Origin: Lytechinus pictus
Taxonomy: Eukaryota
Assembly: GCF_037042905.1 (NCBI RefSeq)
Contig: NC_087249.1
Coordinates: 12,772,001 to 12,836,000 of the forward strand
DNA: 64,000 nt
Direction: 5' to 3'
Part shown: in pieces, positions 20,509-61,600 of the stretch
How the letters are laid out: every line of letters starts with the position of its first letter
How positions within the stretch are numbered: the first letter of the stretch is position 1
Notes under the pieces: generated by a model
The model's database searches: none
What the model saw: the letters and a program-made list of their open reading frames with translations, nothing else
Told to the model about the DNA's origin: nothing
Made by a program: the position numbers and the translations under genes

Positions 20509-22589
20509 CCCAGCCCCAGCTAGCTCGGCCCTGTAAATTCAGTCGTACGGGGGTACAGCCCAAGGCAAGCTAGCGGGCGAGAAGTGGAGCATTCGCCGGT
20601 CAGTTCCCCTTACACTCAGTACCGTACACGTCATCGATCCGCAGACCGAGTGATTGATCCACGGCACTGAACAGGTACGAGTTTATGATGAAATTACCTT
20701 ATTACAGTAGTTCTTTCTACTGTGGTACAACAGCACAAAATTGGTGCCCACAAATTGAAAAATATAATAAATTACTTTTTAAATGAATATTCTTAGCATA
20801 AATGTATTTACATACCCTTTTTCTTAGTGCTTTTCTCTGGTTTTTGGTCACCGAAAGACGTCGGGCGTCTCAAAATATTATAACGATAACGCCCTCTACA
20901 GCTTTCTGTTGAAAAAAAAACGTTAATAGCTTGTCACTGCATGATACTATTCAATAACCAGCATAGCATGATAGAGATATGCATATAACTGAACTAATTC
21001 ATACTTGCGAAATGAGCCAAAAATTTTGAGGGTGCCAGATTTGGCGTATCGGGCAAAATCTATAAAAAGTTGCGAGCAAGCGACCGAAAAAGAAATGACA
21101 TTTTTTTACTACATAAATCAAAATTTTTGGATTTTTTTTTTTTTTTTTTTTTTTTTTTGGGGGGGGGGGGGGGGGAGGGCGTTAAGAGCCCCCCATCTGT
21201 ACGCCACTGTTTAATTTTGGACAGTAGTATGTGTTTTCAATGCTTTCAGTGAATGATTAAGGAAGACCTTCACATTTGCCAGAACTTCTTCTTATTAATG
21301 TTGTAAAGTTGATAGCTTAAAACTATTAGGCCTATATGAATTTCTGAAAAAATATGCTCTATTTTTTCTGCTTTTCTATAAAATGTAAATCCTTACATTT
21401 TATTGTTTTGTATCTGATTTATATGACCTTGAATCATCTTTGAATGGAATGGAGTACATGCACACTCTAAAACAATTTTAGAACCTTTAAGGTGAAAGAA
21501 GCAGAAAGTGTTCTAAACAAAGGTTGTTTAGCCTCTTCTACGATGAACCCGTTTAAGGTTATATGAGGTTCTTGATGGTGTAAAGAGCACTGATAAATTT
21601 TGCCAGGGCTGTTAACACCATCATGAACCCAGGTTGTATAACCTTAAGGGATTCCTTAATGTAGAACAAAAAAAAACAGTCAAGCTAATCTTAAAGCGAC
21701 CCCGCACCTTCTTATCTCGTATAGAAAAACAACTTTATTTGGATTGTTCAATTTTTGTTATGTAGTATGCATTTTCTTTGTTAATTATGTATTATGAAAA
21801 GTTGCAGAAACAATGAAAACAAATGAAAAAAAACAAGATTCTAATTAAAGGACTATTAAGAACCCCTTTCTGATTTTTTGGAAGAATCTTAATAAATTCC
21901 AAATATGGGACAAACCAAACTGAAAAGTGCAACGTTGTGTTACTCAACTCACCCTTTTTCCGGATCTCCCTCTCACACCTCTTTCATCCGACTACTACAG
22001 GCTAGCTCCCAATATTGTCCACATACACCCTTTCTCTCCCCCTCTCTCTTATCCTTCCCACCTTTCATTCATTACTATCTCTCTTTCGTCCATCTCCCTA
22101 TCACTCTTCCCATCGACCCTCTTTCTTTCCTTTTATATTTCTCAGTGTATCACAATTTCCGCTCACCTCTTTCGTTTGTAAACTCTCTCTCTTAACTCTC
22201 ATTTCAATCTCTTTCCATCTCTTTCCATTTCTTTCCAATCTCCCCCTCCGTNNNNNNNNNNNNNNNNNNNNNNNNNNNNNNNNNNNNNNNNNNNNNNNNN
22301 NNNNNNNNNNNNNNNNNNNNNNNNNNNNNNNNNNNNNNNNNNNNNNNNNNNNNNNNNNNNNNNNNNNNNNNNNNNNNNNNNNNNNNNNNNNNNNNNNNNN
22401 NNNNNNNNNNNNNNNNNNNNNNNNNNNNNNNNNNNNNNNNNNNNNNNNNNNNNNNNNNNTCTATGACTTTAACCTCACCTCTCTCCTCTCTCTTAATCCC
22501 TCTCATAAAATATTTTGTCCTATCTTTCACCTTTTCACTTGATGTAATGAAGACAGACATAATCAACATGAAATATATTATATATACAT

Positions 22590-23572
22590 AATATTTAATC
22601 AATCTCTTGTAGAAACCAGCCGTACCTGACGGACATACAAAATCTTATATGTAATCTTTTCATTAATCATTGTCATCATTTCAACAAATTCAGATATAAT
22701 GCAAAGCTTTATACAACTAAAAAAAAAATTGATGTGCAAAAATCTTGTCAAAATTATGTATGTTCTTAACCAGCCGTCCCAGACGGAATTTTACACGAAC
22801 ATTGAAATATACGAAACATTGGAAACTAATCAATCGACAAAAAATCTCCTAAGATAGAGTTGAAATAATCATCTAAAAATGCAATATTTCTGATTGAATT
22901 TCATACGTTTTCCCAGAAATCACTTCAAACCATAAAAACAATACTTGATTTCAACGGACCATCCCAGACGGGTGTTTTTTTTTTTTACATTAACATCAAT
23001 ATATATAAAACATTTGCAATTATTCAAAGGACGGAATTTTCTAAAACTATAGTATACAAAAAATCATTATAAAACATGTTCAATTTCCGAACCAAAATAA
23101 ACTTTCATTATTTGGTATTTAGCATATTATGAGCAAAATTCCGAATGAAAAAAAAACAACAACCAGAGTTTATAATGAGTTTTAACAATCAAACAAAATA
23201 AAACATTGATATTCTTACCCCGATTCTTACCTACTATATTTTTGGGGTGCATATCGTTCATTGTCATGTATATAATCACACGATTACCCAAATATATTTC
23301 ATTTCACAATGATATTATGGCATTGTTGATAAGTAGGGCAAAATTCAAGTTTCTAGATTTTTATAAGCTTGTCAATACAAGAGAAAAAAATTGCAACAAA
23401 TAAATTATAAGCACAAACGCAGACTCTGTCTCTACAAGTTACACACAAAAAACAGAAAATAAGCGATAGCTGGACATATTTTCGTTTCATCAGCCTCCAC
23501 TTCGATCACGTAGACACACCATAGGTTATTATCGTAATCACCGGGATAGTTTGGTGATGCTAATGAACCTTG
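22590..23572 (-). pseudogene. Truncated fourth SpAN/BP10 paralog: 84-bp CUB2 exon fragment fused to a copy of the paralog A 3' region
   Basis: 23572-23489 encodes [28 protein letters not shown] (cf. gene A ~26458-26375). 23490-22590 aligns with the gene A downstream sequence ~25367-24470. Confidence 0.85.
22620..22971 (-). promoter_or_regulatory. Three SRE-like hairpins in the remnant paralog 3' region
   Basis: CCGT-CTGGG-ATGG (22971-22959, G-U pair), CCGT-CTGGG-ACGG (22786-22774), CCGT-CAGGT-ACGG (22632-22620); ATTAAA at 22599-22594. Confidence 0.6.
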
Positions 23573-23575
23573 TAA

Positions 23576-23679
23576 TTATTACATTTGTGGGTGAAATTAT
23601 TACATTTGTGGGTAAAGTGTTATTACATTTGTGGGCGTTATTACATTTGTGGGCGTTTATTACATTTGTGGGTGTAACA
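23576..23679. repeat. Tandem TTATTACATTTGTGGG motif x5 ending in TGTAACA (transposon-end-like)
   Basis: Visible repeats; a similarly built (GACATTATGCGTT)n...TGTAACA block lies at ~34335-34499. Confidence 0.75.
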
Positions 23680-24498
23680 GGGGGCACGTGCCCTCCGTAG
23701 TTACGCCACTGTCAGACACATTTTTGATAACTTTTTCAAACTCTTTTTGTATGGGCCTACATGTATACTACTTCTACCCCCACCCATTTTGAACATATAT
23801 ATTTCCTGCGTTTTGTTTGTCTGAGTATATCTGCTCAAATATATTATATTTAGCTTGAAATATTCCTTTAATGCGAATACAAAGTGCTGAAAATGACTGA
23901 TAAAGACCTCCTGACATGAAAAGGTCACATTTCAAACATTATTCGTTTGAATTCAGGACTGGGATACATATCATGCTAGTCAAATAATGCGGAACCCCCT
24001 GATAATGAGCCTGCTCCCATTTCCTCCCTATTTCTGTTTTTTTTTTGTTCACATACTTCCCTCCCCTCTCTCTCCCTTTGTTTGTCCCTTTTTTCTCCCT
24101 CTTCTTCGCTTTCTTTGTCTCCACTCTTCTCCATTTTCTCACATCTTTATCTTTCATTCTCTCCTCCTCTCGTCTTCCCGGCTTCCTTTCAGATTTCTCT
24201 TTCTTCATCTCCCCTCCTCCACTTTTTCTCTCATCGTTGTCTTTCCTCCCCCTCTTTCTCTCCTTTCTACCCCTTCTCTCATATCTTAATACATATATTT
24301 CTGCTTTCTTTCTTTCCTTTTCTGTCTGTCTTTCTTTCTTTCTTTCTTTCATCTTCCCCTTGTTTATCATATTGCTAATATAGTACAATCGTTATTTCCA
24401 TTATCCATCCAATCACTAATATAGGGCAATGAATAAAAACATGTATTCGAAATATATTATGTTTTTATAAAGTTTAATTCATCTCTTCTAGAAACCAG

Positions 24499-24876
24499 CC
24501 GTACCTGACGGAAAATCACATTATCATAATAGTTACATCATAATTATCATAGATTCAGTCATTCAGATACAATATAAACCTTTTTAATTCAAAATCAAAT
24601 TGAATCGATCAAACTGAATTTTATACGTTTTCACTAAAATCATTAATTTCAAAATTAGTGATTGTTTTCGGCCAGCCGTCTCAGACGGATTTTTTTCCTA
24701 GAACATTGAAACATGCAAAACATTCAAAATTAATAAAATGGCAGAACATTCTTCTAACTTTGAGTTAAAATATTAAATAACATGTAACATTTTCTACTTA
24801 CATTTCGTACATTTTCACTAAAATCATTCCAAAACTTTTTTCAAGGTGATTATTTTCAACCAGCCGTTCCAGACGG
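24499..24876 (-). promoter_or_regulatory. Three Smaug-recognition-element-like hairpins in the putative 3' UTR of gene A
   Basis: Sense strand CCGT-CTGGA-ACGG (24876-24864), CCGT-CTGAG-ACGG (24688-24676, loop variant), CCGT-CAGGT-ACGG (24511-24499); ATTAAA at 24478-24473 just downstream. Confidence 0.65.
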
Positions 24877-25474
24877 AATTTTTACATTAATATCACATAC
24901 AAAACAATCGCAATTATTCACAGAACGGATTTTTAAAATATAATAACAGTTAAAAAGCTACTCGTATTAAACATGTAAAATATCGAAACAAAATAATTGT
25001 CGTTATTTGGCATTATGTTAAGAGCAAGATTCTGAATAAAAACACGAGTTTTAAAAATTCAAACAAATGTATTACAACTACAAGCATTGATTTTATTCCC
25101 TACTATGTTTTACAAGCATACCATTCATTGTCATGTAGATAATCACATGATAACCAAAATATATTCTATTCCACAATAATATTATGGCATTGTTGATGAG
25201 TATGGCAAAATTCAAGTTTCTCGATATCTTATAAAGCTTGTCAATACACAGATACAAGAGAAAAAATGCAACAAATAAATTATCAGCATAAACGAAGACT
25301 CAGCTGCCTCTTCAAGTTATCAAAAAACAAAGAAAAAAAGCGATATCAGGACACATTTTCGTTTCATTGGCAAAATAAAAATAGAAACTGAACTGTCGAG
25401 ATGGTTATGTAGCATGGACATAAATACTTTTCATTGAATATATTACCATATATTCAAGCAATTGAGACGAGATT

Positions 25475-28400
25475 TTACAAATCTATTACACGATAGTCTG
25501 CTCTGAAGCCGCTACTAGTAACAGACCCATCCGTCTTCAGGGTTAGTTCCATCCTGTTACCGATTGACACCAAAGAAGCGGCTGGATACTCAGAACCACA
25601 CATCCTGGAGGAGAAGAAAATAAGAAAAAGCAAACACATTAGCATTTATGGATTGAAGGTATATGAATATTATCAAATATGACTACTATTTTCGAATACG
25701 ATAAAGTTCAATCGCAGTAATATATTAAGACGAAACATTATATTAAATGTGTTGTACACCAACAATTAAAAGAGATTAATCACAAAAGTTATCTATCGTC
25801 TCCCTTTTGATCACTATCACGAGATTTGATTATTATATCACTTAAGTTTAATAATGAAGAATAGTAAGCAGCACATGATATGTCCTGTTAAGCCCTTAAT
25901 GTAATAAAGTCAGATTTTTCTCTCAATTTTGATTTTGATTTGATTTCTTTTTATCTTTAAGTTAAATGAATTTCATTATGTGTGACCAATTACTCAAAAG
26001 ACATTCACTCTTCGAAAAACGTTTGCGAGTGAAGTCACAACTTTTATCACTATCCCACTTTTTGGAAAAACCTGCTTCAACACATTTATGTCGATCTTCA
26101 GAAATCTTCTTATTTGCTTTTTAACTCTCCATTCGTCTTGGGCACCCTCGTGGTTTAGCAGTTTGGCGGGATTATCAAATTCATTTTAGCTTTGAAACTA
26201 CGTTCTAAATGTTATGCAAGTTTCATATTTGTGGATTGCTCGATGATAAAGTAGTGGGCAAACTTACTTCATTGGAACTTTGACACCATCTCCGAGATCG
26301 ATCTCCAGTGCGTCCCATCGGCAGGTACTCTGATCCTCCAGCGAGAAGTCTGCGAATGTCAGCTCAACCCGACGATCAGCCTCCACTTCGATCACGTAGA
26401 CACATCGTAGGTTATTATCGTAATCATTAGGATAGTTTGGTGATGCTAATGAACCTTGGTTGTCATCAAAGCTTCCTCCACATGTTCCGACTACAGGAGG
26501 ATTAGTAGTTGTTTCAGTGGTGGTAGTTGGTGCCTCAGTCGTAGAGACACCCTGGATGACGTAAGTAGCTTTGAAACCACGCCCAGTGATGCTGTAATCA
26601 GATGTGAAAGAAACCAACATCTGGTTGCTACTAGAGATCTGGACAGGGGGTAAGGTGCTACCACAGAACTTCTCTCCGATGGCGTTGATATCGTCTTTGC
26701 GGACCTCGACGGAGTCGTAGCGACAGAGGTTCTCGTTTTCGATGTCCATGTCGACGAATGTCAGTTCAATCGTACTTCCTGCAACTCCCTGTTTAAATTA
26801 TAAGTTAAAAGAAAGAAAATGGTAATAAAATTGCATCGTTAGCATTTTTTAATAATATTTTTTTCTACCATAATATATATTTCTTCTTTAGAATGATCAA
26901 TAATTTCCTTTATGGTGATTCGTAAGGTTTGTCATTATTTGGAAAACATCTTTTACAGTATGAATCATTATAGAAGTAGAATCATAGGCGACGGAAGCCG
27001 GGGGGGGGGGGCGACGTGTCCCCCCTAAATTTTAGGTAGGGGGGGGGCGATCCCCCCTAAATTTTTTGTTGGTAACTTTTTTTTTTTTTTGCTTGTAATT
27101 TTTTTTCCTGCGTCCCCTTATAATTTGTGGTTGATAACCTTTTTTTTTTGCTTGTCAAAAAATTGTGTGGTGGTCCCCCCTAAAACTTTTGGCTTCCGCC
27201 GCCAATGAGTATAATGCCACATTGTCTTTATTGATTTCAATCTAAATTAAATCATTATGAGGATATAAAGTCTCACCTCAATAAGGTACATGCATTCCTG
27301 GTCGTTGTCATAGTTACTGGGGTAGTTTGGTGACGTAATCTCTCCCTGTGTGTCCGTCAATCTTTGGTAACATGGTGGTGTAGTGGTAGGTCCACTTCCG
27401 TCCTGACACAAGTCACCGCTGTAACCTGGAGGACATACACAGATACAGTTAGTATCATGGTATCCTCCGTTCTGACATTGCTCAGAGCCCGAACATTCAT
27501 TGTCGCACTCGTAGATGAGGTTGGCTAGGGTGATGTCGGCGTTACTAAGACCAGCTCGGTTACCAAGGAGATGCATCTGAAGAGGATCGATGGTTGTGAT
27601 GGTTGGTTGACCATTGCTTGAGAATCCCTTCAGGAGAAAGAAAATGAAATCAAAATGTTATCAATGTGATCAAGATTAATCACAAAATTTAAAAACCTCT
27701 GATATAATCAAGGATTTATACATGTAATATAAGCGCTAATATTCCAATAAGGGCCGGTGAGAATGTCTCCTCATGGTTGAAAAAAAAATGGTACAACGCC
27801 AACGATAATCGTTTTGAATTTTTTAACAAATTGATTTTAGCTAAGTTTATCTGTATTTTCTTAAATGAAATTGTACATATTTCACTTAAAACGTTCACAT
27901 TTGTTTAGCGGAAGGGCCAAAAGTGATATAATGCTTAATAATGATATAATGTTTTCTTACATGTGATCCGTAGTGCATGACGGAGCCGACGTCGTACTCG
28001 ACGTTGCGTGTCGTCACATAATTCCAGTCATACTTTTCGAAGTTGTCTTCCAAGCCAGATTGGATGTTTTCAAAGTGGACATTGATGTAATCGTCTCTGT
28101 CTGGTCGAGATTGTTCGTGATGGAACCCGATGGCGTGTCCGATCTCGTGAGCGACAATACCAAGCTGTTAATAGAAAGAACAAGTGAAGCTTTCACTTAG
28201 AGACGTTGCGACAAAAACATTGATTAACAGACTTTAAACAATGAAAACTTGCCTTTTGTTTGACTCGAGGGTCCCGTGTTTGAAAGATTTTACCTGAACA
28301 AAATTGACTTCTCTCCACCCAATACTAATCTGTTTCTTTATATCTCCATTCGCAATCGGTTTTCCCGTTTGAGTTTTCGCAACACTACGTAGACGATTTG

Positions 28401-41191: not shown

Positions 41192-41428
41192 ACATGTATT
41201 TCGTCTTGTAAACTATATTTCAAGATTTATTCTACATCGCCAAAACATCGGAAAACTTAGAGCTGAAGTCTGACTTTCTGAGCGTGCTGAGATCATTTTT
41301 AATCCACTAGTTTCCATCCATAATTAAGGAGCTTCATTTCTTTATCACTTTTATTAACGTGATTTGCCATCCTATTATAATTCACATGTGTTTTTAAATA
41401 ACCGTGTGGTTATCAGATATTCATCGAG

Positions 41429-44400
41429 ATGAAATTAATTCTCATTCTGGTAGGAGTTGCCGTTTTGGCAAACTGCAGCATCGCGGCTCCAGCGGGAGAG
41501 CAGAAAGAAGCACCCATGGTAAGATTTGTAATTCATGTTTCAACATTTATCGGTGGTGTCTATTTAGAGGCCCATTTTGAGGTCCGGTTTTACTTTTTAT
41601 ATGGTCTAATTGTATAACTGTGATTGTATAATGTTCCAATTGTGAATGATAGGAGGGCTCCTTTGTAAAGCGGGCCTCTTTCGTGAATGGGACTACCCTG
41701 CTTTTTAAAAAGAAAACATGAATAAATAAATAATGAATAGATGCGTCTTAAAATTGTGGGAAGCCAAAATTGTCAAAGTTGCATTTACATGATATATCTC
41801 CTATCTTGACTTGGCTCTTTCTTCATGTTTTAATGATGGAGAAAACAATGTTAATAATAATTCTCAGTCAGTTATCAGAGATTCGAGTTTCATTTTAATT
41901 TTATTTCATTTTCAACAAAGTTTAAAATGAGCTAACAAATTGAAATTGTACTATTGGTTGGAGATACATGTCACCGTTGGCTACTCATAGTTAAACCCCA
42001 TATTTAGATCAGAGTTTGAATTAAACTCAAGTTATGAATGTATATATATATATATTTATGTTTACATTTGCATTTAGGGTTCTTGTTTGATATGCCGTAA
42101 TCGCGAAAGTACATTTCCGTCTTGCAAAGTTTTGATAATGAAAGTTTGACAAGTTATTTTGCCGGGTATGGCATCAAAATGAATGCCGAATTTGGTTGAC
42201 GAGTAGGGTGACGAAATATGTGACGTGGTATTGGTTTTTAACTAACGTAACGGATTGATACCATATTTTCTGAGTGTGTTATGGACATCATGTCTCGAGT
42301 TTATCATCAGAAATCGAAACGTCGTACAAAAAAAATAAATCAACAATATAAACATTAATTTGATTCTTGAAGTTAATTGTCAGACCGCTTGTTCATTCTT
42401 AATATTCCACAACATTTGGAACGGATGTTCTGTCAATTCGTTATTGAATTGCATACATCTGCAACATTTCAGATCCCCCAAAGACACAATTTGATTAAAT
42501 GTCTGGACTCTGCTTTCCAATGAATATAATTTTCCTATTACCTTTCTGGAATTGTACCAATTTTCATCCCAGCCAGTCATTTCATTAACTCAATATACAT
42601 TCGTTATTGTTGACCAATAAATTTACAACCATACATTCCAGCGGTTTCTCGCATATTTCCCCTGTAAGGAGACACCTCCTCCAAGGTAGCCTTCAGAAAC
42701 CTCGATACCGGGACCTCGTTTTTGTTGGTATATCAATTTACAATCATTCATATAGATAGCGTTTTCTCTCATACATTTCCCATTTTAGGAGACGCCTCCT
42801 CCTGAAAAGCCTTCAGAAACCTCGGCACCAGGACTCCAGAAAACACCAAAACCGGAACCCAAGGATGAGGAGCCAGTTTCCGGGGCATTCCAGGGAGACA
42901 TGATGCTAACAGAAGAACAGCTGATGAAAGTTGAGGAGGCCATCGATGATGAGAAAGCTGGTCGTAAGAAGAGAAAGGCTACAAATAACGAAAGCCAACG
43001 CTGGCCATACAAAATCGTCCCTTACGTCATTGATTCGTCTTTAAGTAAGCTCATGTTTCGACCTGTGTTTGGCGAAAGTCTTGTTTTACATTCACCGTTT
43101 CCTCCTTGTCCGTTTTTTTTTAATTTGTTTCGGAAGTATCAAAGTGTTGATTTGGGGCTTTATTGGTTTACCCATAAGTGTCCATTATTCGTTTGCTCTC
43201 TTCGCATGATATTTGTTTCGAATGGGATATATTTTAATTTGAACACATCGTATCTATGACCATTTATCATTGTCATTATTTTACTTTGTTAGGAATATTC
43301 ATAACTTTATTCATCGATTACACAGCAACGTCAAACTATTTCAAATCTACAAAATTCGACTTAAATGATCATCGTCTACTTGGTTTTAGACTTTTAATTG
43401 TAATTCTAGACAGAATGCAAGTCTGTGATTATTTGGAGAATGGATGTAAATTTTAATCAAAATGGAAGGAACTTAGATTTTCTCATCCTGTCCTTTAAGA
43501 TTTGGTAGATTTTGTTTACACTTTCCCTTTCATCTCTATCGACGAATGATTAATTCTTTAGGTGGAATATCTAGCTTGATTCGCTCTGCCATGGACCACT
43601 GGGAACAGAACACCTGTCTGAGGTTCGAACCCCGGACCTCGTCACACTCCAGGACGCTGAGGCACGGCTCGTATATCTCATTCTTCCGAGGGTCTGGATG
43701 TTGGTCGCATGTTGGACGAGCCTACCCAAATCAGCAACAGATATCTATAGGACCCGGATGTGGCTACGTAAGTTCACAATAATTGACGTCATCTGAAATT
43801 AACATTGGGTGATTTTAAGTCTGGTGTTGATGCTTAAATTTGTTGAAAGCACAATTTTGATTGCGTTTCTCTAGCCATAAAACCTATTCTGAGTCTACAT
43901 AAACATCCAGGTCACAACATTGACAGCTCGACACTCAGTGAGGTTTCAGGACCAACGTCATTTTATGTTTGGTGTTATGTAAGTTATGTTCATGTAAAAA
44001 AATGATCGAACAGCATTAAAAGATCAACACTGAACTTGAAATCACCCATTGGCTCCACCTTAATCGCATCTTGGGATATCGATAAGCGTTGGAACGAGAT
44101 ATGGTTCTGTTCAATCAAAATAGTTTTTCGCAATCTGTTGCGAAAAAAGAAATGAAATATAACAAGTGTACAATCGTTTATTGTTATACGAAATGCTTAA
44201 GGGTGAATTGAAAGTAGGTATACCTCAGGTAAGAAAAAAAAAACGACTTTTAGTGTTTCCACCTAAAGGCGAAGCAAGATTAGTCACTCAAACAACCTTA
44301 AGCATTAAAATACATGGCGCGAATAGATATTAATATTATTGTTAATATTACTATTGTTATTACTATCATGATTGTAATAATTAGTATTATTATCATGATT

Positions 44401-47400
44401 ATTGTCATTATTATCATCAATATTGCCATCATTGTTATTGTCATCATTATTATTGTTGTTTTTCTATTCAGCAAAAGAAGTAAACATTACAATCAGATAT
44501 ATGAGATAAGTTTAAGTAAATAACTTGGGCAAGTATGTCGAAGATATATTTCACTTCTTATTTTTCTTTTCATGAGTTTCAATAAGAAAAATTTATTCGT
44601 GAAAAATGAATATATTTGCACGCCAAGAATATGTTAGTGTTTGGATTATATGTAGTCATAGTCGTGATCGTGATTACATTTTCTGTTTACAGTTTGGAAC
44701 CATCGTTCACGAAATCGGACACGCCATCGGGTTCCATCACGAACAATCTCGACCCGACAGAGACAACCACATCAACGTCTTCTATCAGAACATCCAGTCC
44801 GGTCGGCAACATAACTTTGCTAAATACTCCTGGGGAACTGTGACGACACAGAATGTTAACTACGATGTTGGCTCAATCATGCATTATGGAGGCTATGTAA
44901 GTATATCAGTGTCATTAATTGTTTAAATTTCTCATTTAGTTTGGTTTATTAATTGTTTAAAAATCTTTTTTGATTTATTGACCTTCTGCAACTTTTTCGT
45001 AAAGGCAAATTAACAAAGAAAATACAATAAACGGTAAACAGAATATTTTTATCAAAGGGATATTTGAATAAAAATGCATCTCTAATTTACATCAATTAAT
45101 ATATATATGTTAATCATTATTCTAAATCATTCTCAATAATATTCCTTCTTTATGCATTTGCATCCCCCTTTTAGGCCTTTTCTTCCAATGGTCAACCGAC
45201 TATCACAGCCCGTGATCCCCGACTCAACAGTCGCCTCGGTCAACGGACCGCTCTTAGCGCGGCCGACATTGCACTGGCAAACCTCATCTACGAGTGCGAC
45301 AACGTCGAAGATTGCTCCGACGCCGACGAATGCCTGAATGAGGGTTATCACGACGATGACTGCGTTTGCGTGTGTCCTGCTGGCTATAGCGGCGACGTGT
45401 GCCAAGATGGCGGACCAACCCTTCCACCAATTAGTTGCTCCAACGTGTTCACCGAGACCATCGGGGTGCTGACGTCTCCTAACTACCCCGGGGACTATGA
45501 CGATGGCGCGACTTGCTTGTACCAGATCGATGTAAGTCTACAAATCAGATGAATAACTGTTTATTTCGATTATTCCTTTTAAGAATATTGATTTGAAAAA
45601 AAAAGAAACATGACCGATGTAACAGAGATTAGTAGTTTTCCATGTCTATCCAAGGGAGCGTTTAATTAACATTTTTATCTGACAAGTACTATTTCATCTG
45701 ACAGTTACTATGGTAACAGTGCCATTCAGCGAATCATAATCAAGGAAAGTTGTCAGACCTGGCAACTTGTCGGACAAAAATGTTGATGAAACGCTCACCT
45801 GACAACTTTCCTTTATTCTTATTGGTTAAGAGGCATTGTTACTATGGTAATTGTCGGATAAAACGTCCGACAAGTCCTTTCATGAAATGCTCCCCTGAAT
45901 AATATGATTCCAACATAATGTAAAAAAAAAAAATTAATGTAAGCAATCTTGAAGTTGCTCAAGTAGAGTTTGTAATAAAATCTAGCCTTTATTTTTTCTT
46001 TTATTCTGATGGTTTCGCTTTCAGGGACCGGTAGGGAGCACTATCGAACTGACATTCATCGACATGAACATCGAAACGGAGGCTCTGTGTCGCTACGACG
46101 CCGTCGAGGTTCGCAAAGACGACATCAACGGTGTCGGAGAGAAGTTCTGTGGAAACACCTTACCCCCCAACCAGATCTCTAGTAGCAACCAGATGCTGGT
46201 TATCTTCACATCTGATTTCAGCATCACCTGGCGCGGTTTCAAAGCTACCTACGAAATCGTGATTGATTCAACAACGAGGCCGCCGACGACGACGACGGCG
46301 GCAACGACCACCGTACAGACGACGACGGAAACAACCACACTGCAGGCAATGACTGATGACCCAGTGGTCGGTACTTGTGGCGGGGAATTTGTTGATGAGG
46401 AAGGACGTTTTGCATCACCGAACTTTCCTAGTGACTACGATAACAATCTTGAATGTGCGTACGTGATCGAAGTGGTTGATGATCGTCGAGTTGAACTCAT
46501 GTTCGAGGACTTTGCTCTTGAGGACCAAGCCTCCTGCCAGTGGGATGGACTCCTGATTAACCTGGGAGATGGTATCAAAGTCGACATGAAGTAAGTGAAC
46601 ACATTACGGCATTTTTGCAATAAATACGCAGACGCTTTTTGGAACGCAGAGAATCTATTGTCTAAAGCCCTTCATGACAAAGCAGTCTTTGTCGAAAATT
46701 GGTGAATAAAATCAGCAGTTTCGTCCTGGACTCTGGACAAAATAAAAAAATAAAAAAACTTAGGATGAAACTGTTATTCACCAATTTTCGTCAAAGACCT
46801 AGCCTGCTGTTCTCTGTCATTTGTTTGACAGGCATTTTCAATACGTTAGGGAATTTTAGCAATCCCTTCGCAGTCGCTTTCTATAACGCAGAAAATCAAA
46901 AGCCCTAAATGACAAAACAGCCTTTGTCGAAAATCGTTGAATCAAAGCAGCTGAGTCGTAGCTCTGGACAAACGACATTTGCATTTTTTATTTTAAGATG
47001 ATCTGCTCTCTTGGTCCACCAACGATCAAACATGACCTCTAATCTCTCCATTGTCAGTTGACGGGCATTTTCAATAGATTCTCAACGTTCCAGAAAGCGT
47101 GTGTGAAGTGGTTTCGAAAATACGCTACTGTCTACCAGAAACGGGAAGTCCTGTTTAGAAACCAATAGGAATTACAAAATCCATTAGTCAACTGGTTTAT
47201 CATATTAGTTGCTTTCTAAATTCACCTTCCTCAATTATTTTACTTATTCTTGGTCTTGACTGTGAACTTACATTCTGCGATTAAAAGTTCATCACAACGA
47301 ACGTAGACAGAGTTCGTCAACACCTTGTATGTGTTGCTACCATCTACGTTAATTGGTACATGACTTTATTATAGTGATGTCAATATGTATCGCGATGTCT

Positions 47401-48160
47401 TCTGCGATTAAACAAGTGATTGACAAGAGTAGAATAATCTCTCTCTGCCGAATAAGTAAAATGAATGATTCATTTTTTTTTTCATCCACTTTTGTACAGT
47501 GAAAATTATAATGGTATTTTACGGATTGTGTGTATTATAAAACTGCGTTCATTGTTCATCTATCTTGGTTTAAGCAAATGAGAGGGTACATCAGGGGCCC
47601 GTAAAACAAAGCTTAGCAATAATCGTAGAACATTTTTCTACGATTGATTCCATTGACTAACATGTACAATCAATCGTGAAGATAAAGCGTACGATTAATC
47701 GATAACATTTGTGTTACGGGTCCCGGGTGTCAAAGAGAAGGTGGAATCAATTCCATGCTCTTTGTCTGCAAAAATTGATTCATATCATTAGTCAAAATAC
47801 GTTATACTAAAAAAGATTATTGGAAATGGAATGCTCTTTTTACAATCCGGTCAATTTACGATATTATCCATGTTTTTTAAATCAAATTTTGTACAAAATA
47901 GATGTTTTTATCAGCAAAAGGTGTTTTGCGTCAATATACTCTCTCCAAACAATTCATGAAGGTCTAATCCCAAATGTCAAAAATTAATATATTTATTAAT
48001 TTTTTTCTTTGTTTATTTATTCTTCTCCAGAATGTGTGGTTCTGAGTATCCAGCCGCTTCTTTGGTGTCAATCGGTAGCAGGATGGAACTTACCCTGAAG
48101 ACAGATGGGTCTGTTAGGGATAGAGGCTTTTTGGCGAGATACCGTGCAATCGATCTCTGA
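41429..48160 (+). CDS. SPAN: SpAN-like astacin metalloprotease, paralog B (closest of the three to SpAN), 602 aa
   Basis: Exons 41429-41518, 42789-43044, 43562-43767, 44693-44896, 45175-45531, 46025-46590, 48031-48160 (1809 nt, GT-AG). Motifs [54 protein letters not shown], two CUBs with a long Thr-rich linker. Symbol rests on recalled similarity to SpAN; orthology needs a tree. Confidence 0.9.
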
Positions 48161-55500: not shown

Positions 55501-56846
55501 TCAACAAATAGTTTATCTATTCCAATTTTACAATATACTGTATATTTTATAAAACATTTAGCGTTTTACAGCTTATTGAGAAATCTTACTATCAACTCCA
55601 AATGATTTGTTCATCGTTCAAAATATGACTTAGCATTTATGAATAAAGTATGTTCTACAGAATTATAAGAATATTATAATATTATTATTTTTTCTTCTTT
55701 ACTTATCATTTAAACAGGGAGTTGCAGGAAGTACGATTGAACTGACATTCGTCGACATGGACATCGAAAACGAGAACCTCTGTCGCTACGACTCCGTCGA
55801 GGTTCGCAAAGACGATATCAACGCCATCGGAGAGAAGTTCTGTGGAAGCACCTTACCTCCTGTCCAGATCTCTAGTAGCAACCAGATGTTGGTTTCTTTC
55901 ACATCTGATTACAGCATCACTGGGCGTGGTTTCAAAGCTACTTACGTCATCCAGGGTGTTCCTACGACTGAGGCACCAACTACCACCCCTGAAACAACTA
56001 CTAATCCTCCTGTAGTCGGAACATGTGGAGGAAGCTTTGATGACAACCAAGGTTCATTAGCATCACCAAACTATCCCGAAAATTACAGTTGTAATCTTCG
56101 GTGTGTCTACGTGATCGAAGTGGAGGCTGATCGTCGGGTTGAGCTGACATTCGCAGATTTCTCGCTGGAGAATCAGAGTACCTGCCGATGGGACGCACTG
56201 GAGATCGATCTCGGAGATGGTGTCAAAGTTCCTATGAAGTAAGTCTAACAGCAGTATTTTATTTAAACCCTCTAAAACAGCATGCCATGTATTTAAAAGA
56301 ATAAAAAATATCTCATGACACAAAGAATGTTTCGTTTTAAAGATCCGATGAGATAAAAGAAAGTGTTAATGGATGATTTCAAGTTCAGCGTTGACCTTTT
56401 GGTGTTGGTGTTATGCTCGCTGTGTAAAATAATGATCATTATTTTACACAGCGAGCATAACACCAAACGTAACACGAAGACGGTCCTGAAAAGTCATTCA
56501 CTAGTCGTTGAGGTGTCAATAATGTGATCTGGACCAGTTTTACAAACTCAGAATAGGTTTTGGAGCTGGAGGAAGCAATTCAAATTGAGTTTCCAACACC
56601 AACACCGGACATAAATCACCTAATGTGTTTGTTGTTTGACCAGTCTTAACTTTTCACCACGAACGAATAAATAATGTTTCTTCTTCTCCTCTTTTCTCTT
56701 TACCTTTTCTCTCCAGGATGTGTGGAAGTGAGTATCCAGCCGCTTCTCTGGTGTCAATCGGTAACAGGATGGAACTGACACTGAATACAGATGGATCTGT
56801 CACCGATCGGGGCTTTTTGGCGAGATATCGCGCAATTGAACTGTAA
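52579..56846 (+). CDS. SpAN/BP10-like astacin metalloprotease, paralog C, 578 aa
   Basis: Exons 52579-52665, 53533-53770, 54056-54261, 54488-54691, 55069-55419, 55718-56238, 56717-56846 (1737 nt, GT-AG). Same domain order, with [12 protein letters not shown] and SVMHY; exons 2-6 nearly identical to paralog A. Confidence 0.93.
52880..53150. mobile_element. Harbinger-like MITE in gene C intron 1
   Basis: GGCCCCGTCTTACAAAGAG...CTCTTTGTAAGATGGGCC with CAG/CTG-like flanks. Confidence 0.75.
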
Positions 56847-57984
56847 GACTATACCTTGCCTGTAAACAAGAAACAAGAAAGTTGTACTGCATTGACATTA
56901 ATAATGTTGGCCATCCAAGACTAGACATCTCCTAAAGGCGACATGAACGTTAAGATTTTCCCTTGATTTTGAAGATGTTAAAGTTGGTGTGACGGTTGCA
57001 TGACATTTGCTCCGACGACAATTGCTCCGAAGGAAAATCTGCACATTAAGTCAAACATAAAACCTTACTTTTAAAACTACATGTAAATAAACCCTAATCA
57101 TTATCTTTACATTATTCTGAACCAAAAAAGACTATCACAATCCTAGCTCTAACCCTATACCCTCTGAGATATTCATACCGGAGCAATTGTCACAGGAACA
57201 AATGTCGTGTCAACGGTGTGACACCGAGTGAGGTATACATCTAAAGGTGACCGCACACCTTGCGATCGGTCTGCGACCCGATTTTGGAATAACACGTAGT
57301 ATAATTTGATGCTAATATTGAGACATGGAATATCTTACTGTGTAATGTTCGAAATCGTTGTACGATTACATATGTTCAAATCTGTGAATATGCTATCATC
57401 CTTCTTAGAATAAAAACAAATTTAATATCTAGTCGCAATGACGTCATAGCAGTCGTACGATTGGCTACGATTTGAAACTAAATTGGCCTTTACTCCAAAA
57501 TAAAGGCTTGCAATCTTTCAAAATGATTATAATAGTATTCTTTCAATTAATTTCAATTGTAATGAAATGATATGTTCCATTCATATTCTCAGAAAATTAG
57601 CAAAATGCGATTTGTTCCAAAATCGGATCGCGAGCAGTCGTAAGGTGTGCGGTGGCCTTAACAGAGTTATAAGTCTTTCCTGTGTATCATCACGAATCAA
57701 GAAAATTACGCAGTAAAGAAAAAAATGATGAATGCTAAAATCATAGCCAAACAACTTTGCATTATGTCTACAAGCGTGACAAGTTTAACTTTTAAATACG
57801 CGATAAATATTCAACATTTTTTACTCTTTGTTTTGTTCAATACAAAGGAATTTGGTGCTTGATATTTCCCTCTATTGTTGTATTTAAATTCTCCTTCATA
57901 TTTTTTATAATAATAGCAAAGCCAATGATATGTTGCAATAAAATGCCAAAAATGATATACTGTATTATTAATAAGAAACATAAA

Positions 57985-58638
57985 CCGGCTGGTACGGCGG
58001 GAAAAGATACAGATGAAATATTGATACCTTTTATCTATTTATATTTTTATCATGCGCATATTAACTTATATGTTATATATTTGCAATATACTTGTAACTC
58101 ATAAGTATAGTCATACCACTGCTATGATTATTAGAAAGTTATTATACTTATTACATATACAACATATCGGATATTTTTCGTTTTTTTTATTTTAGAATTA
58201 TTTTAATTGTATGAATTCACTTCCACAATGTTTTGATAAACATAAAGGTTAATGTGAATAATACGACGGCTAGCTAAGCACTTCTGTCATTTCGACATGC
58301 GACCATTAAACAGGAACAAAAGTATTTATATAATTCGAACGTCTAAAAATAAAATTTTAATGCGCTGTAATTTGCCAATCAAAGGAGGATTGACTAAAAT
58401 GACCTAATTTTAATCATAATTAGGTCATTTTGTGTTTGACGCATCTCCGAAAAGTGCTCAAAATTGACCACACATCTGGAATGTTTTCTAATTTTTGTCG
58501 GACACAGTCATATTCACCACTACATTGATAACGTTTAGGATATTATTTATTTATGATAAAGTAAGATGATCTTTGTTGTTGTAAATGATGATGTGTTTTC
58601 CGTCTGGTACGGCTGGATAAGACACGCATAAAATAAAA
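57985..58638 (+). promoter_or_regulatory. SRE-like hairpins and poly(A) signal in the putative 3' UTR of gene C
   Basis: CCGG-CTGGT-ACGG (57985-57997, closing mismatch), ACAT-CTGGA-ATGT (58472-58484), CCGT-CTGGT-ACGG (58600-58612); AATAAA at ~58632-58637. Confidence 0.6.
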
Positions 58639-61600
58639 TACTTATATTATCAAAATCATGCGTTTGTTCCCATTTTGAATTGTGTGATAAAAAGAAATAT
58701 GCGGGGGGTATAAGATAAATAAAAAAAATAGATGAAAAGGAGAGGGGAAGAGAGAGAAGGGTGGGAAGAGAGTTGAAATGATAGACAATTTAAAAGTAGG
58801 GGGATAGATAGAAAGAGAGAAGAGATAAAGAGGGGGAGAGGGAGAGAAGGGTGTGAGGAGAGTTGAAATGATGGATAATTTAAAAGTAGAGGGGGATAGA
58901 AAGAGAGAGAGAGAGAGAAAGATAGAAGAGATAAAGGAGGAGAGAGAGAAGGGTGTGAGGAGAGTTGAAATGATAGAGAAAAGTGGAGAGAGTGAAAAAA
59001 GTAAGAGAAAGAAAGAGAAAATGTGAGATAAATAGAAACAAAAGAAAATTGACAAGTTTAACACAAATATTAAAATATGATTTATTCCACCTAAATCCAC
59101 CAAAGCTTCCAACTGTTTTATATTTTACAAAATAATGAAATGATAATTGACCAAAATAAACAAGTAAAGGGGGAGATTTTTTTACCATTAATGATAATGA
59201 TCATAATAATGATCATTATTACGAAAAGTCGAAACAATAGTGAAATTATCATATTTATGATGATGATTATTGCCATTTGCACTACTTAAACTAAAGGTAA
59301 ATTAATCAAACTATAATTTTTTACTGCTCGATTGCTTTTCTCTCTCAAATTCTTATTTCCGTCAGAATATAATGATTTCGCACTTTTATCAATAATTGTA
59401 AATATGTTATCTCATGAAATTAGGTTTAAAATTGAAAAAAGGAAGATCTGTTGCAAAACTACGGGGGAGCACGGAGGCACGTGCCCCCAATCTGCTGGCA
59501 AAAAAATCCGAGGAAAAAGGGGAAAAGAGAGAAACGGAACGAGAGACATAGATGAAAAAGCAAAAAAGGATATATTAGAAAGAATATATATTTTTTAATT
59601 GCAATAAGTATTTATTCATGTTGGTTTCAAATATGTAATAGAAACGCTACATTTTACGATTTGTACTAATTTTTTAAGGCTAAATTTCATGCTATCTGTA
59701 TGAGTTTTGTACTTTTGTTGGAAACAAGTGGTTATTCTTCGCCGCTTTCGGTCTTAATACAAAAAAGATTAAGCTCGCACTTCGCATCATATTTTTGGAT
59801 TAGTGAAATACGTATTTTCTTTATGAATTCCTACAGAGGGTCCTTAGAATGTTACCTTTTCAGGTCTCAATATCCAACATTTTCCAGCTCGCGCTTCCTG
59901 TTTGCAATACTTGATTCGTGAGATAGGAATCATGTTCATGATTAAAAAAAAGTGTAAAAAAATTTCCTGTTTTAGGTCTAAATGTAAAAAAAAAAAAAAA
60001 AAAAAAAACGAGCTCGCGCTTTGGCGCTCGCATGAGATTCTTATGCTAAGATATATATGCTCTGCATGAATTCCTAAAAAGAATCCCCTTTTCATGTCAA
60101 TAATTTCAGCTCATGCTTCGCGCTCACATGGTTTGATTGAGAGACATTAATGTTTTTCGTGAATTCCTAAAAACATGTCCTCAAAATGTTAATTTTTCGG
60201 ATCAATATAAATGAAAATTCTAGCTGGCGCTGGCATTGTTTGCTTAATAAGAAACGTAGCGGGTGTTCAAAGATTTGCATAATTATGAGGTCCCGTTATC
60301 AGGTCTGAACCTAAAAAAATCAGTTCGCGCTTCGCGACCACGTTATTTGATTAGTGAGATAGTGTTCTTTCCATGAATTTCTACCAACAGCCCTTCTTTT
60401 CAGGTCACTTACCTCGCGCGCTCAATAAATGATTCAAATTTTGCTTTTGCTCCCCAATGATGTGACCCACGATACGCCAGTGATTACAAATATAATTTAC
60501 CTTTCGAGATCCTGTGCATGTAAGGATTTCAGATTTGAAAGCGCAAAAGAGAAAGAGAAAATTGTCATATTTTGGGTACATATTTCAATCCAATTCAATT
60601 CTTTCATTCCATTTCCATTCAAAACATAATACAAAGTAATATAAAGTAATACAAATCAAATACAATTTTACAGACGAGCATTCTTACTTAATAAAACAAA
60701 ACAAAAAACATTATAATATTGAGCATAAATGGAAATGAGGGGGGTTCACTAAAAAGCAAAGCTTTTTAAGTGTGGATACCCATTGGAAATAAAGAAAATA
60801 TAATCGACTTATTCATATATGCGTTCATATACAGGAAAGAAAAAAGAGAAGGAACAAAAAGGTCGAAATCATATTGATGTAAGCGTAATTACAGAACAAG
60901 TGCAAAGTTATTCACACAAAGAGGCCTTCGCTGTTAAGGATATGTTGCGCAATAGACAGAAGAAAAAGCAGAGAGAGAGAGATAGGAAATGACAAGACAT
61001 AGAAGACAAGACAAAAGAAGAGACAGGACAGTACAAGACATGATAACATAATAAGTAACAAAAAATTAAAAGGAGGAAAAGTCAGAACGGGGAAGGGCTG
61101 ACCACAAACCGTCTGTAGTATGGATGTGTCCATAAATGCGTTTCTATCATGATTTCAGGATTTCATGAATTCGTTCTAAGAAAAAAAAATAATGGTCGAC
61201 CATGAAGAATGGGTCAGCATTTACCTCCCCAAAATATAAGAAAATAAAATATATAGAAAATTATGGCTATGTGGGCGGATCATTTGCTTTTAGACGGGTT
61301 GGTCGTCCACGCTTTTTAGCGCCGCTTTGGGTGTACCCATTTGTCTCTACAATTTTAGAATTTTCTCTAGTTTTGTTACTTTGCTCCCGTAGATGAATAT
61401 CTCGTTTTATGATCTTGGCTTTCTTTTAAGTAGGCTTTTCTAAAGGGATTGAACATTTGAAAGGTAATAGTACAATTGTTTAAATTTTGCTCGCTATCGC
61501 AAGTTTTGGTCCTTTCTTGCTAACTGCGACCCACAAAACGAGATCTGTGGATCGGTAGGCCAGCAGCCTTTGCAGAAGTTGAATACTATCTGGAATATAG

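What the first reader, a model, noticed from the sequence alone, without database searches (positions are those of the whole stretch)
24470..24880. Array of Smaug/SAMD4-type CNGGN stem-loops in the putative 3' UTRs of blastula protease genes
Seen: on the sense strand downstream of gene A (3 copies), the remnant (3) and gene C (2 perfect, 1 degenerate), a GC-rich 13-mer recurs inside otherwise AT-rich, diverged DNA. It has a 4-bp stem (usually CCGU/ACGG) and loops CUGGA, CAGGU, CUGGG, CUGGU, and once CUGAG. Loop variation falls almost only at positions 2 and 5. One stem change keeps pairing by G-U. The last hairpin in each locus sits ~20 nt before AUUAAA/AAUAAA. Established: Smaug/Vts1/SAMD4 SAM domains bind stem-loops with a CNGG(N) loop and drive repression and deadenylation; SpAN/BP10 transcripts are transient in very early blastulae. 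Inference: these zygotic protease mRNAs carry a multi-SRE cassette that times their clearance. I do not know of this being described in echinoderms.
Basis: partly seen in the sequence, partly recalled or inferred. Interest (0 to 1): 0.9.

Follow-up and report, generated by a model that had tools for sequence, protein, structure and literature searches.

The report
Conserved 3'UTR hairpin in urchin proteases
A 17-base hairpin-forming motif, repeated two to six times in the transcribed 3' untranslated regions of one subfamily of sea-urchin blastula protease genes, has stayed letter-for-letter the same between distantly related urchins, and its loop resembles known binding sites for proteins that control mRNA tails and stability.

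Summary
The window is from Lytechinus pictus. The 13-mer is the core of a 17-mer, CCGUC-N-G-R-N-ACGGCUGG. It occurs 8 times in the 812-Mb genome, all in this gene cluster and all on the genes' sense strand, so it is not a transposon. Spliced RNA contigs from three studies run past the proximal AAUAAA of gene A and carry hairpins 1 and 2. Gene C's distal region is also held by RNA runs. The same 17-mer lies in mRNA contigs of other urchins (up to 6 copies) and downstream of three Diadema antillarum paralogs, in 3' regions that otherwise do not align. The most distal copy usually sits 15-21 nt before A(A/U)UAAA.

The Smaug reading is only partly supported. Most loops fit CNGGN, and a Smaug-type SAM exon exists in the genome. 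Against it:
- the stem and the GCUGG tail never vary
- a recurrent CUGAG/CCGAG loop breaks the consensus
- predicted hairpin stability is inconsistent
- the true SpAN orthologs lack the motif
- ZCCHC14-TENT4, which stabilises RNAs, reads the same loop

The direction of the effect is therefore open. No binding or function was tested.

The parts
24860..24876 (-). Gene A copy H1 of the 17-mer (hairpin 24876-24864, stem CCGU/ACGG, loop CUGGA, tail CUGG)
   Evidence: covered by spliced-RNA contigs of X7, X1 and X5
24672..24688 (-). Gene A copy H2 (loop CUGAG, the class II loop; predicted as a 5-bp stem with a UGA triloop)
   Evidence: covered by RNA contigs
24495..24511 (-). Gene A copy H3 (loop CAGGU), the most distal copy
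   Evidence: not covered by RNA contigs. The X1 contig ends at 24515, next to a 27-nt stretch identical in A, the remnant and D
24473..24478 (-). Distal poly(A) signal AUUAAA, 16 nt after the end of H3
25092..25097 (-). Proximal AAUAAA. Transcripts read through it. In X1 the contig depth drops from 282 to 122 across it
24455..25474 (-). Gene A 3' UTR (about 1 kb, 28% G+C)
   Evidence: stop codon located; RNA contigs span 25514-24515
25475..25603 (-). Last coding exon of gene A (end of CUB2; stop codon TAA at 25477-25475)
   Evidence: splice joint 25603/26267 seen in RNA contigs; 98-100% identical to P0152, 'blastula protease 10-like' of L. pictus
22616..22786 (-). Remnant: two perfect copies (22786-22770, loop CUGGG; 22632-22616, loop CAGGU), with ATTAAA 16 nt after the last
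   Evidence: no RNA contig coverage
22959..22971 (-). Remnant degenerate copy (CCGU CUGGG AUGG; G-U pair; tail lost)
58600..58616 (+). Gene C distal copy (loop CUGGU). AAUAAA at 58632-58637 lies 15 nt after it
   Evidence: region 57900-58660 held at 0.58-0.97 of sampled words by RNA runs
58472..58484 (+). Gene C CNGGN hairpin with a different stem (ACAU CUGGA AUGU). Homology to the 17-mer is uncertain
57985..58001 (+). Gene C degenerate copy (CCGGCUGGUACGGCGGG; closing pair broken, tail changed)

Best explanation
The element is an ancient cis-acting RNA motif that is private to one gene family. Its sequence is 5'-CCGUC-N-G-R-N-ACGGCUGG-3': a 4-bp GC-rich stem, a 5-nt loop and a fixed 3' GCUGG tail. 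It is reiterated 2-6 times in the 3' UTRs of a 'blastula protease 10-like' subfamily of echinoid astacin-EGF-CUB genes. That subfamily is a paralog of the SpAN/BP10 clade. One copy is held about 15-21 nt upstream of the poly(A) signal.

Shown: it is transcribed, it is unique to this gene cluster in the genome, and it is conserved letter-for-letter between Lytechinus, several unnamed urchins and Diadema while the surrounding UTR has diverged beyond alignment.

Inferred: it is a protein-binding site that acts on the mRNA's poly(A) tail, stability or translation. The most likely reader is a Smaug-type SAM domain, which recognises an apical G presented on a C:G-closed CNGGN loop. Candidates are SAMD4/Smaug (repression and deadenylation through CCR4-NOT) or a ZCCHC14-like adaptor (tail extension through TENT4).

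The invariant stem and tail imply that recognition is more sequence-specific than for a canonical SRE, perhaps through a second contact or a partner. The sign of the effect (clearance or stabilisation) is not determined.
For: - Uniqueness: 8 exact copies in 812 Mb, all in this cluster and all sense; copies with one mismatch are at control level. Seven of the 30 genome-wide CCGTCNGGNACGG matches lie here.
- Transcription: spliced contigs of X7, X1 and X5 (three studies) cover 25514-24515, including H1 and H2, and bridge the proximal AATAAA. Gene C's distal region is held at 0.58-0.97 by the same runs.
- Orthologous mRNA contigs with uninterrupted coding sequence carry 1-6 sense copies: L012, L013, L014, L025 and L026.
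- L025 ends in poly(A) 38 nt after its last copy.
- Three Diadema antillarum paralogs carry 2 copies each.
- The longest words shared between Lytechinus and Diadema 3' regions are the 18-19-mers of the motif. The UTRs otherwise align no better than shuffled sequence.
- The conserved block has sharp edges. Positions 1-5, 7, 10-14 and 17 are invariant in 20 of 20 copies, and positions 6 and 9 are free.
- The distal copy lies 15-21 nt before A(A/U)UAAA in A, C, D, the remnant, Dant_a and Dant_c.
- Loops: 22 of the 29 canonical-stem copies are C-N-G-G-N (plus L026). Five-nucleotide CNGG loops are the optimal Smaug site (PMC4053848). CUGGA is the ZCCHC14-bound loop of the HAV Vb stem-loop (PMC9282228).
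- A Smaug/Vts1-type SAM exon is present at C7:3604486-3604596. Its best solved-structure match is Drosophila Smaug 1OXJ (E = 2.7e-7), followed by Vts1.
Against: - There is no covariation. The stem is CCGU/ACGG in 27-28 of 28 copies across all lineages, so the pairing is inferred only from the inverted repeat.
- The invariant stem and GCUGG tail are not features of SREs, where Vts1/Smaug contact the loop and the 5' stem on a non-specific stem (PMC4053848).
- The base 5' of the loop is always U, whereas G is preferred by Smaug homologs (PMC4053848).
- Six copies carry CUGAG or CCGAG (A at loop position 4), conserved from Lytechinus to Diadema. This breaks the invariant G4.
- Nearest-neighbour folding predicts the hairpin with probability from 0 to 0.97 depending on context. 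Z-scores are near 0, and the isolated hairpin is only -2.7 to -2.9 kcal/mol.
- Copies whose loop ends in G are predicted as a 5-bp stem with a triloop.
- No binding, half-life or tail data exist.
- H3 of gene A is not covered by any RNA contig.
Confidence: 0.5

Rival explanations
1. The 17-mer is read in a sequence-specific way by something other than a SAM domain. That could be another RNA-binding protein that contacts CCGUC...ACGGCUGG as a largely linear or bipartite site. It could also be a trans-acting RNA that pairs with the conserved ACGGCUGG. In this reading the CNGGN resemblance is incidental.
For: - The stem and the GCUGG tail are invariant, with sharp block edges and no compensatory change over a very long time.
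- The CUGAG/CCGAG class keeps everything except the SRE-defining G4.
- Thermodynamic support for the hairpin is inconsistent.
- The element is private to one gene family rather than shared with other mRNAs.
Against: - The two free positions (6 and 9) coincide exactly with the N positions of CNGGN.
- The perfectly conserved 4+4 inverted repeat is what a very short stem, with little room for intermediates, would show.
- No complementary sequence exists elsewhere in the genome at 17-mer resolution.
- No known factor for this sequence could be named.
Confidence: 0.27
2. It is a DNA-level element, such as a transcription-factor site, a 3' enhancer or silencer, or a termination or pausing signal. 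In this reading it merely happens to lie in the transcribed 3' region.
For: - The core is an inverted repeat (CCGT...ACGG; CCGTCTGAGACGG is nearly a perfect 13-bp palindrome).
- Orientation relative to the gene is inherited by descent, so it is not independent evidence for RNA.
- Stem sequence invariance is typical of protein-DNA sites.
Against: - Every copy lies inside a transcribed 3' UTR or in the matching position downstream of the stop.
- One copy keeps a fixed spacing of 15-21 nt to the poly(A) hexamer in both Lytechinus and Diadema.
- In L025 a copy sits 38 nt from the poly(A) tail.
- The conserved block is asymmetric (3' GCUGG only).
- The CCGAG variants break the extended palindrome.
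Confidence: 0.1
3. There is no function. The copies are relics of recent gene and intra-UTR duplication or gene conversion, or part of a mobile element.
For: - H1 and H2 of gene A sit in a longer ~80-nt internal duplication.
- The unexpressed remnant keeps two perfect copies.
- L025 copies lie in tandem ~90-200-nt units.
Against: - The identical 17-mer is found in Diadema and in several other urchins, in UTRs that are otherwise unalignable.
- Gene C keeps it in a UTR that does not align to gene A.
- There are only 8 copies genome-wide, all in this cluster.
Confidence: 0.03

Closest known systems
Smaug recognition elements (SREs) of Drosophila nanos and Hsp83 and of yeast Vts1 / mammalian SAMD4 targets
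   Same: - A short hairpin with a CNGG(N) loop. Five-nucleotide loops and CUGG are optimal (PMC4053848).
- Several copies per mRNA.
- Location in an embryonic mRNA.
- A Smaug-type SAM exon is encoded in the genome.
   Different: - SRE stems are non-specific, and there is no 3' tail requirement. Here the stem and GCUGG are invariant.
- The base 5' of the loop is U, not the preferred G.
- A conserved CUGAG/CCGAG class lacks G4.
- One copy has a fixed spacing to the poly(A) signal.
- Classical SRE targets are maternal mRNAs, whereas SpAN/BP10-type genes are zygotic (established knowledge; not tested for these paralogs).
ZCCHC14-TENT4 CNGGN pentaloop elements (HBV PRE, HCMV SL2.7, HAV stem-loop Vb)
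   Same: - A short stem-loop with a CNGGN pentaloop bound through a SAM domain.
- The HAV Vb loop is CUGGA, identical to gene A's H1 loop (PMC9282228).
- WPRE carries two such loops.
- These elements act on the poly(A) tail (PMC11102861), which fits the position of one copy next to the poly(A) signal.
   Different: - They are known from viruses and vertebrate cells, and they stabilise RNA by mixed tailing.
- No ZCCHC14 ortholog was identified here. There is only a second, weaker Smaug-like SAM exon at C2:49491107-49491196.
Cytoplasmic polyadenylation elements (CPEs)
   Same: The analogy is positional only: a 3' UTR element held within about 20-25 nt of the AAUAAA hexamer (my own knowledge, not tested).
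   Different: CPEs are U-rich linear motifs bound by CPEB. They have no sequence or structural similarity to this element.

Membership tests
Smaug recognition element (SRE) | Hairpin whose loop starts with CNGG (CNGGN0-3; 5 nt optimal) | tested here: met
   22 of 29 canonical-stem copies are C-N-G-G-N pentaloops (L026). Not met by 6 copies with CUGAG or CCGAG, nor by 1 with AUGGA.
Smaug recognition element (SRE) | Recognition by loop and shape on a non-specific stem, so that stem sequence is free to vary while pairing is kept | tested here: not met
   The stem is CCGU/ACGG in 27-28 of 28 copies and the 3' GCUGG is invariant. The only both-sided changes come from one gene C hairpin of uncertain homology.
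Smaug recognition element (SRE) | Lies in the mature mRNA, sense strand | tested here: met
   Spliced RNA contigs cover H1 and H2 of gene A. RNA runs hold gene C's distal region. mRNA contigs L012, L013, L014, L025 and L026 carry the motif. H3 of gene A is not covered.
Smaug recognition element (SRE) | A Smaug/Vts1/SAMD4-type SAM-domain protein is encoded by the organism | tested here: met
   An exon at G000:C7:3604486-3604596 encodes the WLKSLRLHKY-type SAM N-terminal half. Its best solved-structure matches are Smaug 1OXJ (E = 2.7e-7) and Vts1 (E = 4e-4), ahead of generic SAM domains. Embryonic expression was not tested.
Smaug recognition element (SRE) | Bound by the SAM domain; confers repression or deadenylation | not testable with these tools
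   Needs gel shift or ITC, reporter mRNAs and knock-down.
ZCCHC14-TENT4 CNGGN element | CNGGN pentaloop on a short stem | tested here: met
   As above. The CUGGA loop equals that of HAV Vb (PMC9282228).
ZCCHC14-TENT4 CNGGN element | A ZCCHC14-type adaptor is present, and target RNAs show mixed tailing or tail extension | tested here: inconclusive
   A second Smaug-like SAM exon lies at C2:49491107-49491196 (Smaug 1OXJ E = 0.006) but was not identified further. Tail composition is not testable here.
Dispersed repeat / transposon fragment | Many copies scattered over the genome on both strands | tested here: not met
   8 exact copies, all in one cluster on C5 and all sense. The reversed-pattern control gave 0, and one-mismatch copies are at control level.
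Rfam families | Match to a curated covariance model | tested here: not met
   Nothing near gathering score in 24400-25500. The best hit was E = 0.79, to an unrelated bacterial sRNA.

The most novel reading that the evidence does not exclude
The element is a cellular counterpart, private to one gene family, of the viral CNGGN 'tail-control' elements. It would be a bipartite hairpin-plus-GCUGG site, held at a fixed distance from the poly(A) hexamer. It would couple a Smaug-type SAM reader (SAMD4 or a ZCCHC14-like adaptor) and a second factor to the polyadenylation or deadenylation machinery. This would set the sharp rise and fall of an early zygotic protease mRNA, and the arrangement has been kept since before the Diadema-Lytechinus split.
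Probability: 0.2. Interest if true: 0.8.

Novelty: new variant of a known kind. Interest (0 to 1): 0.6.

Why it matters
SpAN/BP10-type proteases are textbook 'very early blastula' genes whose mRNAs appear and vanish within hours. Their transcriptional control has been studied, but the post-transcriptional side has not. I found nothing on Smaug/SAMD4 or such hairpins in echinoderms in the searchable literature.

A 17-nt element that is perfectly conserved across echinoid orders, reiterated, and positioned next to the poly(A) signal is a precise handle that can be mutated. It could be used to test how zygotic mRNAs are timed in a deuterostome embryo.

It would also give a natural cellular substrate for SAM-domain hairpin readers. 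For these, the repressive (Smaug-CCR4-NOT) and stabilising (ZCCHC14-TENT4) outcomes are known mostly from fly maternal mRNAs and from viruses.

The invariant stem and tail suggest a recognition mode beyond the textbook 'loop on any stem'.

Tried and rejected
- Transposon or dispersed repeat: rejected by the genome-wide counts.
- Rfam scan of the UTR: nothing.
- Thermodynamic support: single-sequence folds and pair probabilities are inconsistent and give no z-score signal. They neither confirm nor exclude the hairpin.
- Covariation: none is usable because the stem is invariant. The only compensatory changes come from the gene C hairpin at 58472, whose homology is uncertain.
- Global UTR alignments: identities equal those against shuffled partners, so they were used only to show that the UTRs cannot be aligned.
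- Alternative CUGG/CUGG wobble hairpin, seen in the gene C minimum-free-energy fold: the CAGG and CUGA copies cannot form it, so it was rejected as an explanation for the tail.
- PHAT-domain search for Smaug: negative, and its one weak hit is AT-rich junk.
- SAM_1 search: 51 hits, not resolvable by itself. It was resolved by a back-translated signature pattern recalled from memory and then verified against solved structures.
- X13 raw reads: too little depth in the UTR to map 3' ends.
- P0238 contig: no DNA available.
- Metagenome scan: it also returned a GC-rich bacterial tandem repeat (L024) that contains the 17-mer by chance.
- Extending the motif to SpAN proper: none found, even with up to 3 mismatches, in S. 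purpuratus SpAN, gene B, L015, the D. setosum gene, Dant_d or Patiria.
Full report
**What is in the window.**
- The window is G000:C5:12772001-12836000 of Lytechinus pictus. The protein P0152, 'blastula protease 10-like [Lytechinus pictus]', lies on a contig of the same length, 57,468,504 bases, and matches gene A at 98-100%.
- The window holds three astacin-EGF-CUB-Thr-CUB genes.
  - Gene A is on the - strand. Its stop codon is at 25477-25475 and its last exon is 25603-25475.
  - Gene B is on the + strand, with its stop codon starting at 48158.
  - Gene C is on the + strand, with its stop at 56844-56846.
- There is also a remnant in which part of the CUB2 exon (about 23572-23486) is fused directly to a 3' UTR.
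- A fourth gene, D, lies 21 kb beyond the window (L009).
- A protein tree puts gene B (P0156, 'SpAN-like') with S. purpuratus SpAN and P. lividus BP10 (support 100/100).
- Genes A, C and D group with unnamed metatranscriptome sequences as a separate 'A-type' lineage.

- CCGT-N5-ACGG occurs 6 times in the window against 0.11 expected.
- The conserved unit is longer than the 13-mer. Positions 1-5, 7, 10-14 and 17 of CCGUC-N-G-R-N-ACGGCUGG are identical in 20 of 20 copies collected. Positions 6 and 9 are free and position 8 is G or A. Conservation collapses immediately outside the block.
- H1 and H2 of gene A also share about 80 nt of flanking similarity, so they arose by an internal duplication.

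**It is not a repeat family.**
- In the whole 812-Mb genome the 17-mer pattern has 8 exact matches: A has 3, the remnant 2, C 1 and D 2. All are on the sense strand of their gene, and the reversed-pattern control gave 0.
- With one mismatch allowed, the extra hits (14) are no more than the control (31).
- Seven of the 30 genome-wide CCGTCNGGNACGG matches lie in this cluster.

**It is in the mRNA.**
- Logan contigs of runs X7, X1 and X5 come from three studies; X5 is an oligo-dT RNA library.
  - They show the GT..AG joints 25603/26267 and 26787/27276, so they are RNA.
  - They cover 25514-24586 (X7), 25137-24515 plus 25514-25108 (X1) and 25373-24621 (X5).
  - All bridge the proximal AATAAA at 25097-25092 and include H1 and H2.
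- This negates the second refutation test, that all transcripts end at the upstream AATAAA.
- In X1 the contig depth falls from 282 to 122 across that site, which hints at alternative polyadenylation. Contig depths are crude, so this is only a hint.
- H3 is not covered. The X1 contig stops at 24515, next to a 27-nt stretch identical in A, the remnant and D. A k-mer assembly graph would branch there, but that explanation is an inference.
- The remnant shows no RNA coverage, although contigs cannot prove absence.
- Gene C's distal region 57900-58660 lies 1.05-1.8 kb past its stop. The same small RNA runs hold 0.58-0.97 of its sampled words, and X5 holds 0.34.

**Conservation across species is the key new result.** Using a full-length relative (P0050) and its homologs, I fetched encoding contigs.

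| Source | What it is | Copies found |
|---|---|---|
| L012 | mRNA contig, uninterrupted 574-aa coding sequence, 85% identical to gene A | 3 sense copies 249, 425 and 1001 nt after the stop, loops CAGGA, CUGAG, CUGGU |
| L013, L026 | close relatives of L012 | 2 each |
| L014 | mRNA contig, a further species | 1 copy with a changed tail |
| L019 | same species as L014 | decayed versions only |
| L025 | mRNA contig, more basal-looking C-terminus | 6 copies plus a decayed one |
| Diadema antillarum (L017, L020) | three paralogs | 2 sense copies each; 493-952 nt after the stop in two genes, 2.2-2.4 kb in the third |

- L025 ends in a poly(A) run 38 nt after its last copy.
- Between Lytechinus and Diadema the longest shared words in these 3' regions are the 18-19-mers of the motif.
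- Global alignments of the UTRs score no better than against shuffled partners.
- By my own knowledge, Diadematoida and Camarodonta separated roughly 200-250 million years ago. I did not test this date.
- The motif is absent, even with up to 3 mismatches, from gene B, S. purpuratus SpAN (4 kb downstream), L015, a D. setosum gene, Dant_d and a Patiria gene.
- Gene B, SpAN and L015 have no CNGG-loop hairpin of any stem in their 3' UTRs.
- The element therefore belongs to one subfamily, not to 'SpAN/BP10' in general.

**Position.** In A, C, D, the remnant, Dant_a and Dant_c the last copy ends 15-21 nt before ATTAAA or AATAAA. A spacing kept in two orders, together with the L025 poly(A) end, argues for an RNA-level role tied to the 3' end or the tail.

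**How it most likely works.**
- The two free positions are exactly the N positions of the CNGGN pentaloop.
  - Smaug/Vts1/SAMD4 SAM domains read that loop. The consensus is CNGGN0-3, and five-nucleotide loops and CUGG are best (PMC4053848).
  - ZCCHC14 also reads it and recruits TENT4 to extend and stabilise tails. This is known for HBV PRE, HCMV SL2.7 and the HAV Vb stem-loop, whose loop is CUGGA (PMC9282228, PMC11102861).
- 22 of the 29 canonical-stem copies fit the consensus.
- The genome encodes a Smaug-type SAM exon at C7:3604486-3604596.
  - I found it with a back-translated signature recalled from memory.
  - It coincides with a SAM_1 hit.
  - Its best solved-structure matches are Drosophila Smaug (E = 2.7e-7) and Vts1.
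- A second, weaker Smaug-like exon lies at C2:49491107-49491196.
- My best explanation is a SAM-domain-type protein-binding hairpin that controls tail length, stability or translation.

**What does not fit a plain SRE.**
- The stem never varies and the GCUGG tail is fixed. With about 28 copies spread over several lineages, a 'non-specific stem' should have drifted.
- The only compensatory changes come from the gene C hairpin at 58472 (ACAU/AUGU), whose homology is uncertain. MAFFT aligned its CUGG with the tail of H2, not with the loop.
- Six copies, from Lytechinus to Diadema, have CUGAG or CCGAG, so they lack the G4 that is invariant in SREs. In these copies position 9 is always G, so C5 can pair with G9 instead of G8 and still present G7 at the apex. 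This is an inference. ViennaRNA predicts a 5-bp stem with a triloop for them.
- Predicted hairpin probability ranges from 0 to 0.97 with context, and z-scores are near 0.
- Recognition is therefore probably more sequence-specific than for SREs. A different RNA-binding protein, or less likely a DNA-level site, remains possible.
- The direction of the effect (clearance or stabilisation) cannot be read from the sequence.

**Verdict.**
- The element is a new variant of the CNGGN hairpin class.
- I found no description of it, or of Smaug-type regulation in echinoderms, in the searchable literature.

Noticed in passing
window 22540-23600 (- strand): The remnant is a deletion derivative. Part of the CUB2 exon (about 23572-23486) runs straight into sequence homologous to gene A's 3' UTR (about 25350 onward). 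There is no RNA contig coverage of its UTR.
   Followed up: partly
window 24200-24390, 58700-59100, 22460-22540; L009:7560-7950: Purine-rich GA/GAAA-type simple repeats start just after the poly(A) site of each A-type gene copy, so the duplication unit extends beyond the transcript.
   Followed up: no
window 27050-27210 (intron of gene A): A short stretch attracts many partly matching RNA reads and contigs with loose ends and 'goes back' joints (64 reads at 27207 in X13). It looks like an abundantly transcribed dispersed repeat.
   Followed up: no
window 25092-25137: In run X1 the contig depth drops from 282 to 122 across the proximal AATAAA of gene A. This suggests alternative polyadenylation that would give isoforms with and without the hairpin array.
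   Followed up: partly
G000:C7:3604486-3604596 (L027:1489-1599) and G000:C2:49491107-49491196 (L028:1477-1566): Two exons encode the N-terminal half of Smaug/Vts1-type SAM domains (WLKSLRLHKY and WLKKQRLHKY). The first is clearly Smaug-like against solved structures. The second is weaker and follows a Ser/Pro/Thr-rich stretch, so it may be a second reader.
   Followed up: partly
window 41400-48160 (gene B): Gene B is the ortholog of S. purpuratus SpAN and P. lividus BP10 by tree. It sits between the A-type paralogs but has no copy of the motif and no CNGG-loop hairpin in its 3' UTR.
   Followed up: yes
L025:660-1260: In this unnamed urchin transcript the motif sits in tandem units of about 90-200 nt. 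There are five near-perfect copies and one decayed copy, so the array grows and decays by unit duplication.
   Followed up: partly
L024:2520-2780 (- strand of the locus): A GC-rich bacterial metagenome contig carries a 61-nt tandem repeat that contains the same 17-mer by chance. It is unrelated to the urchin element.
   Followed up: no
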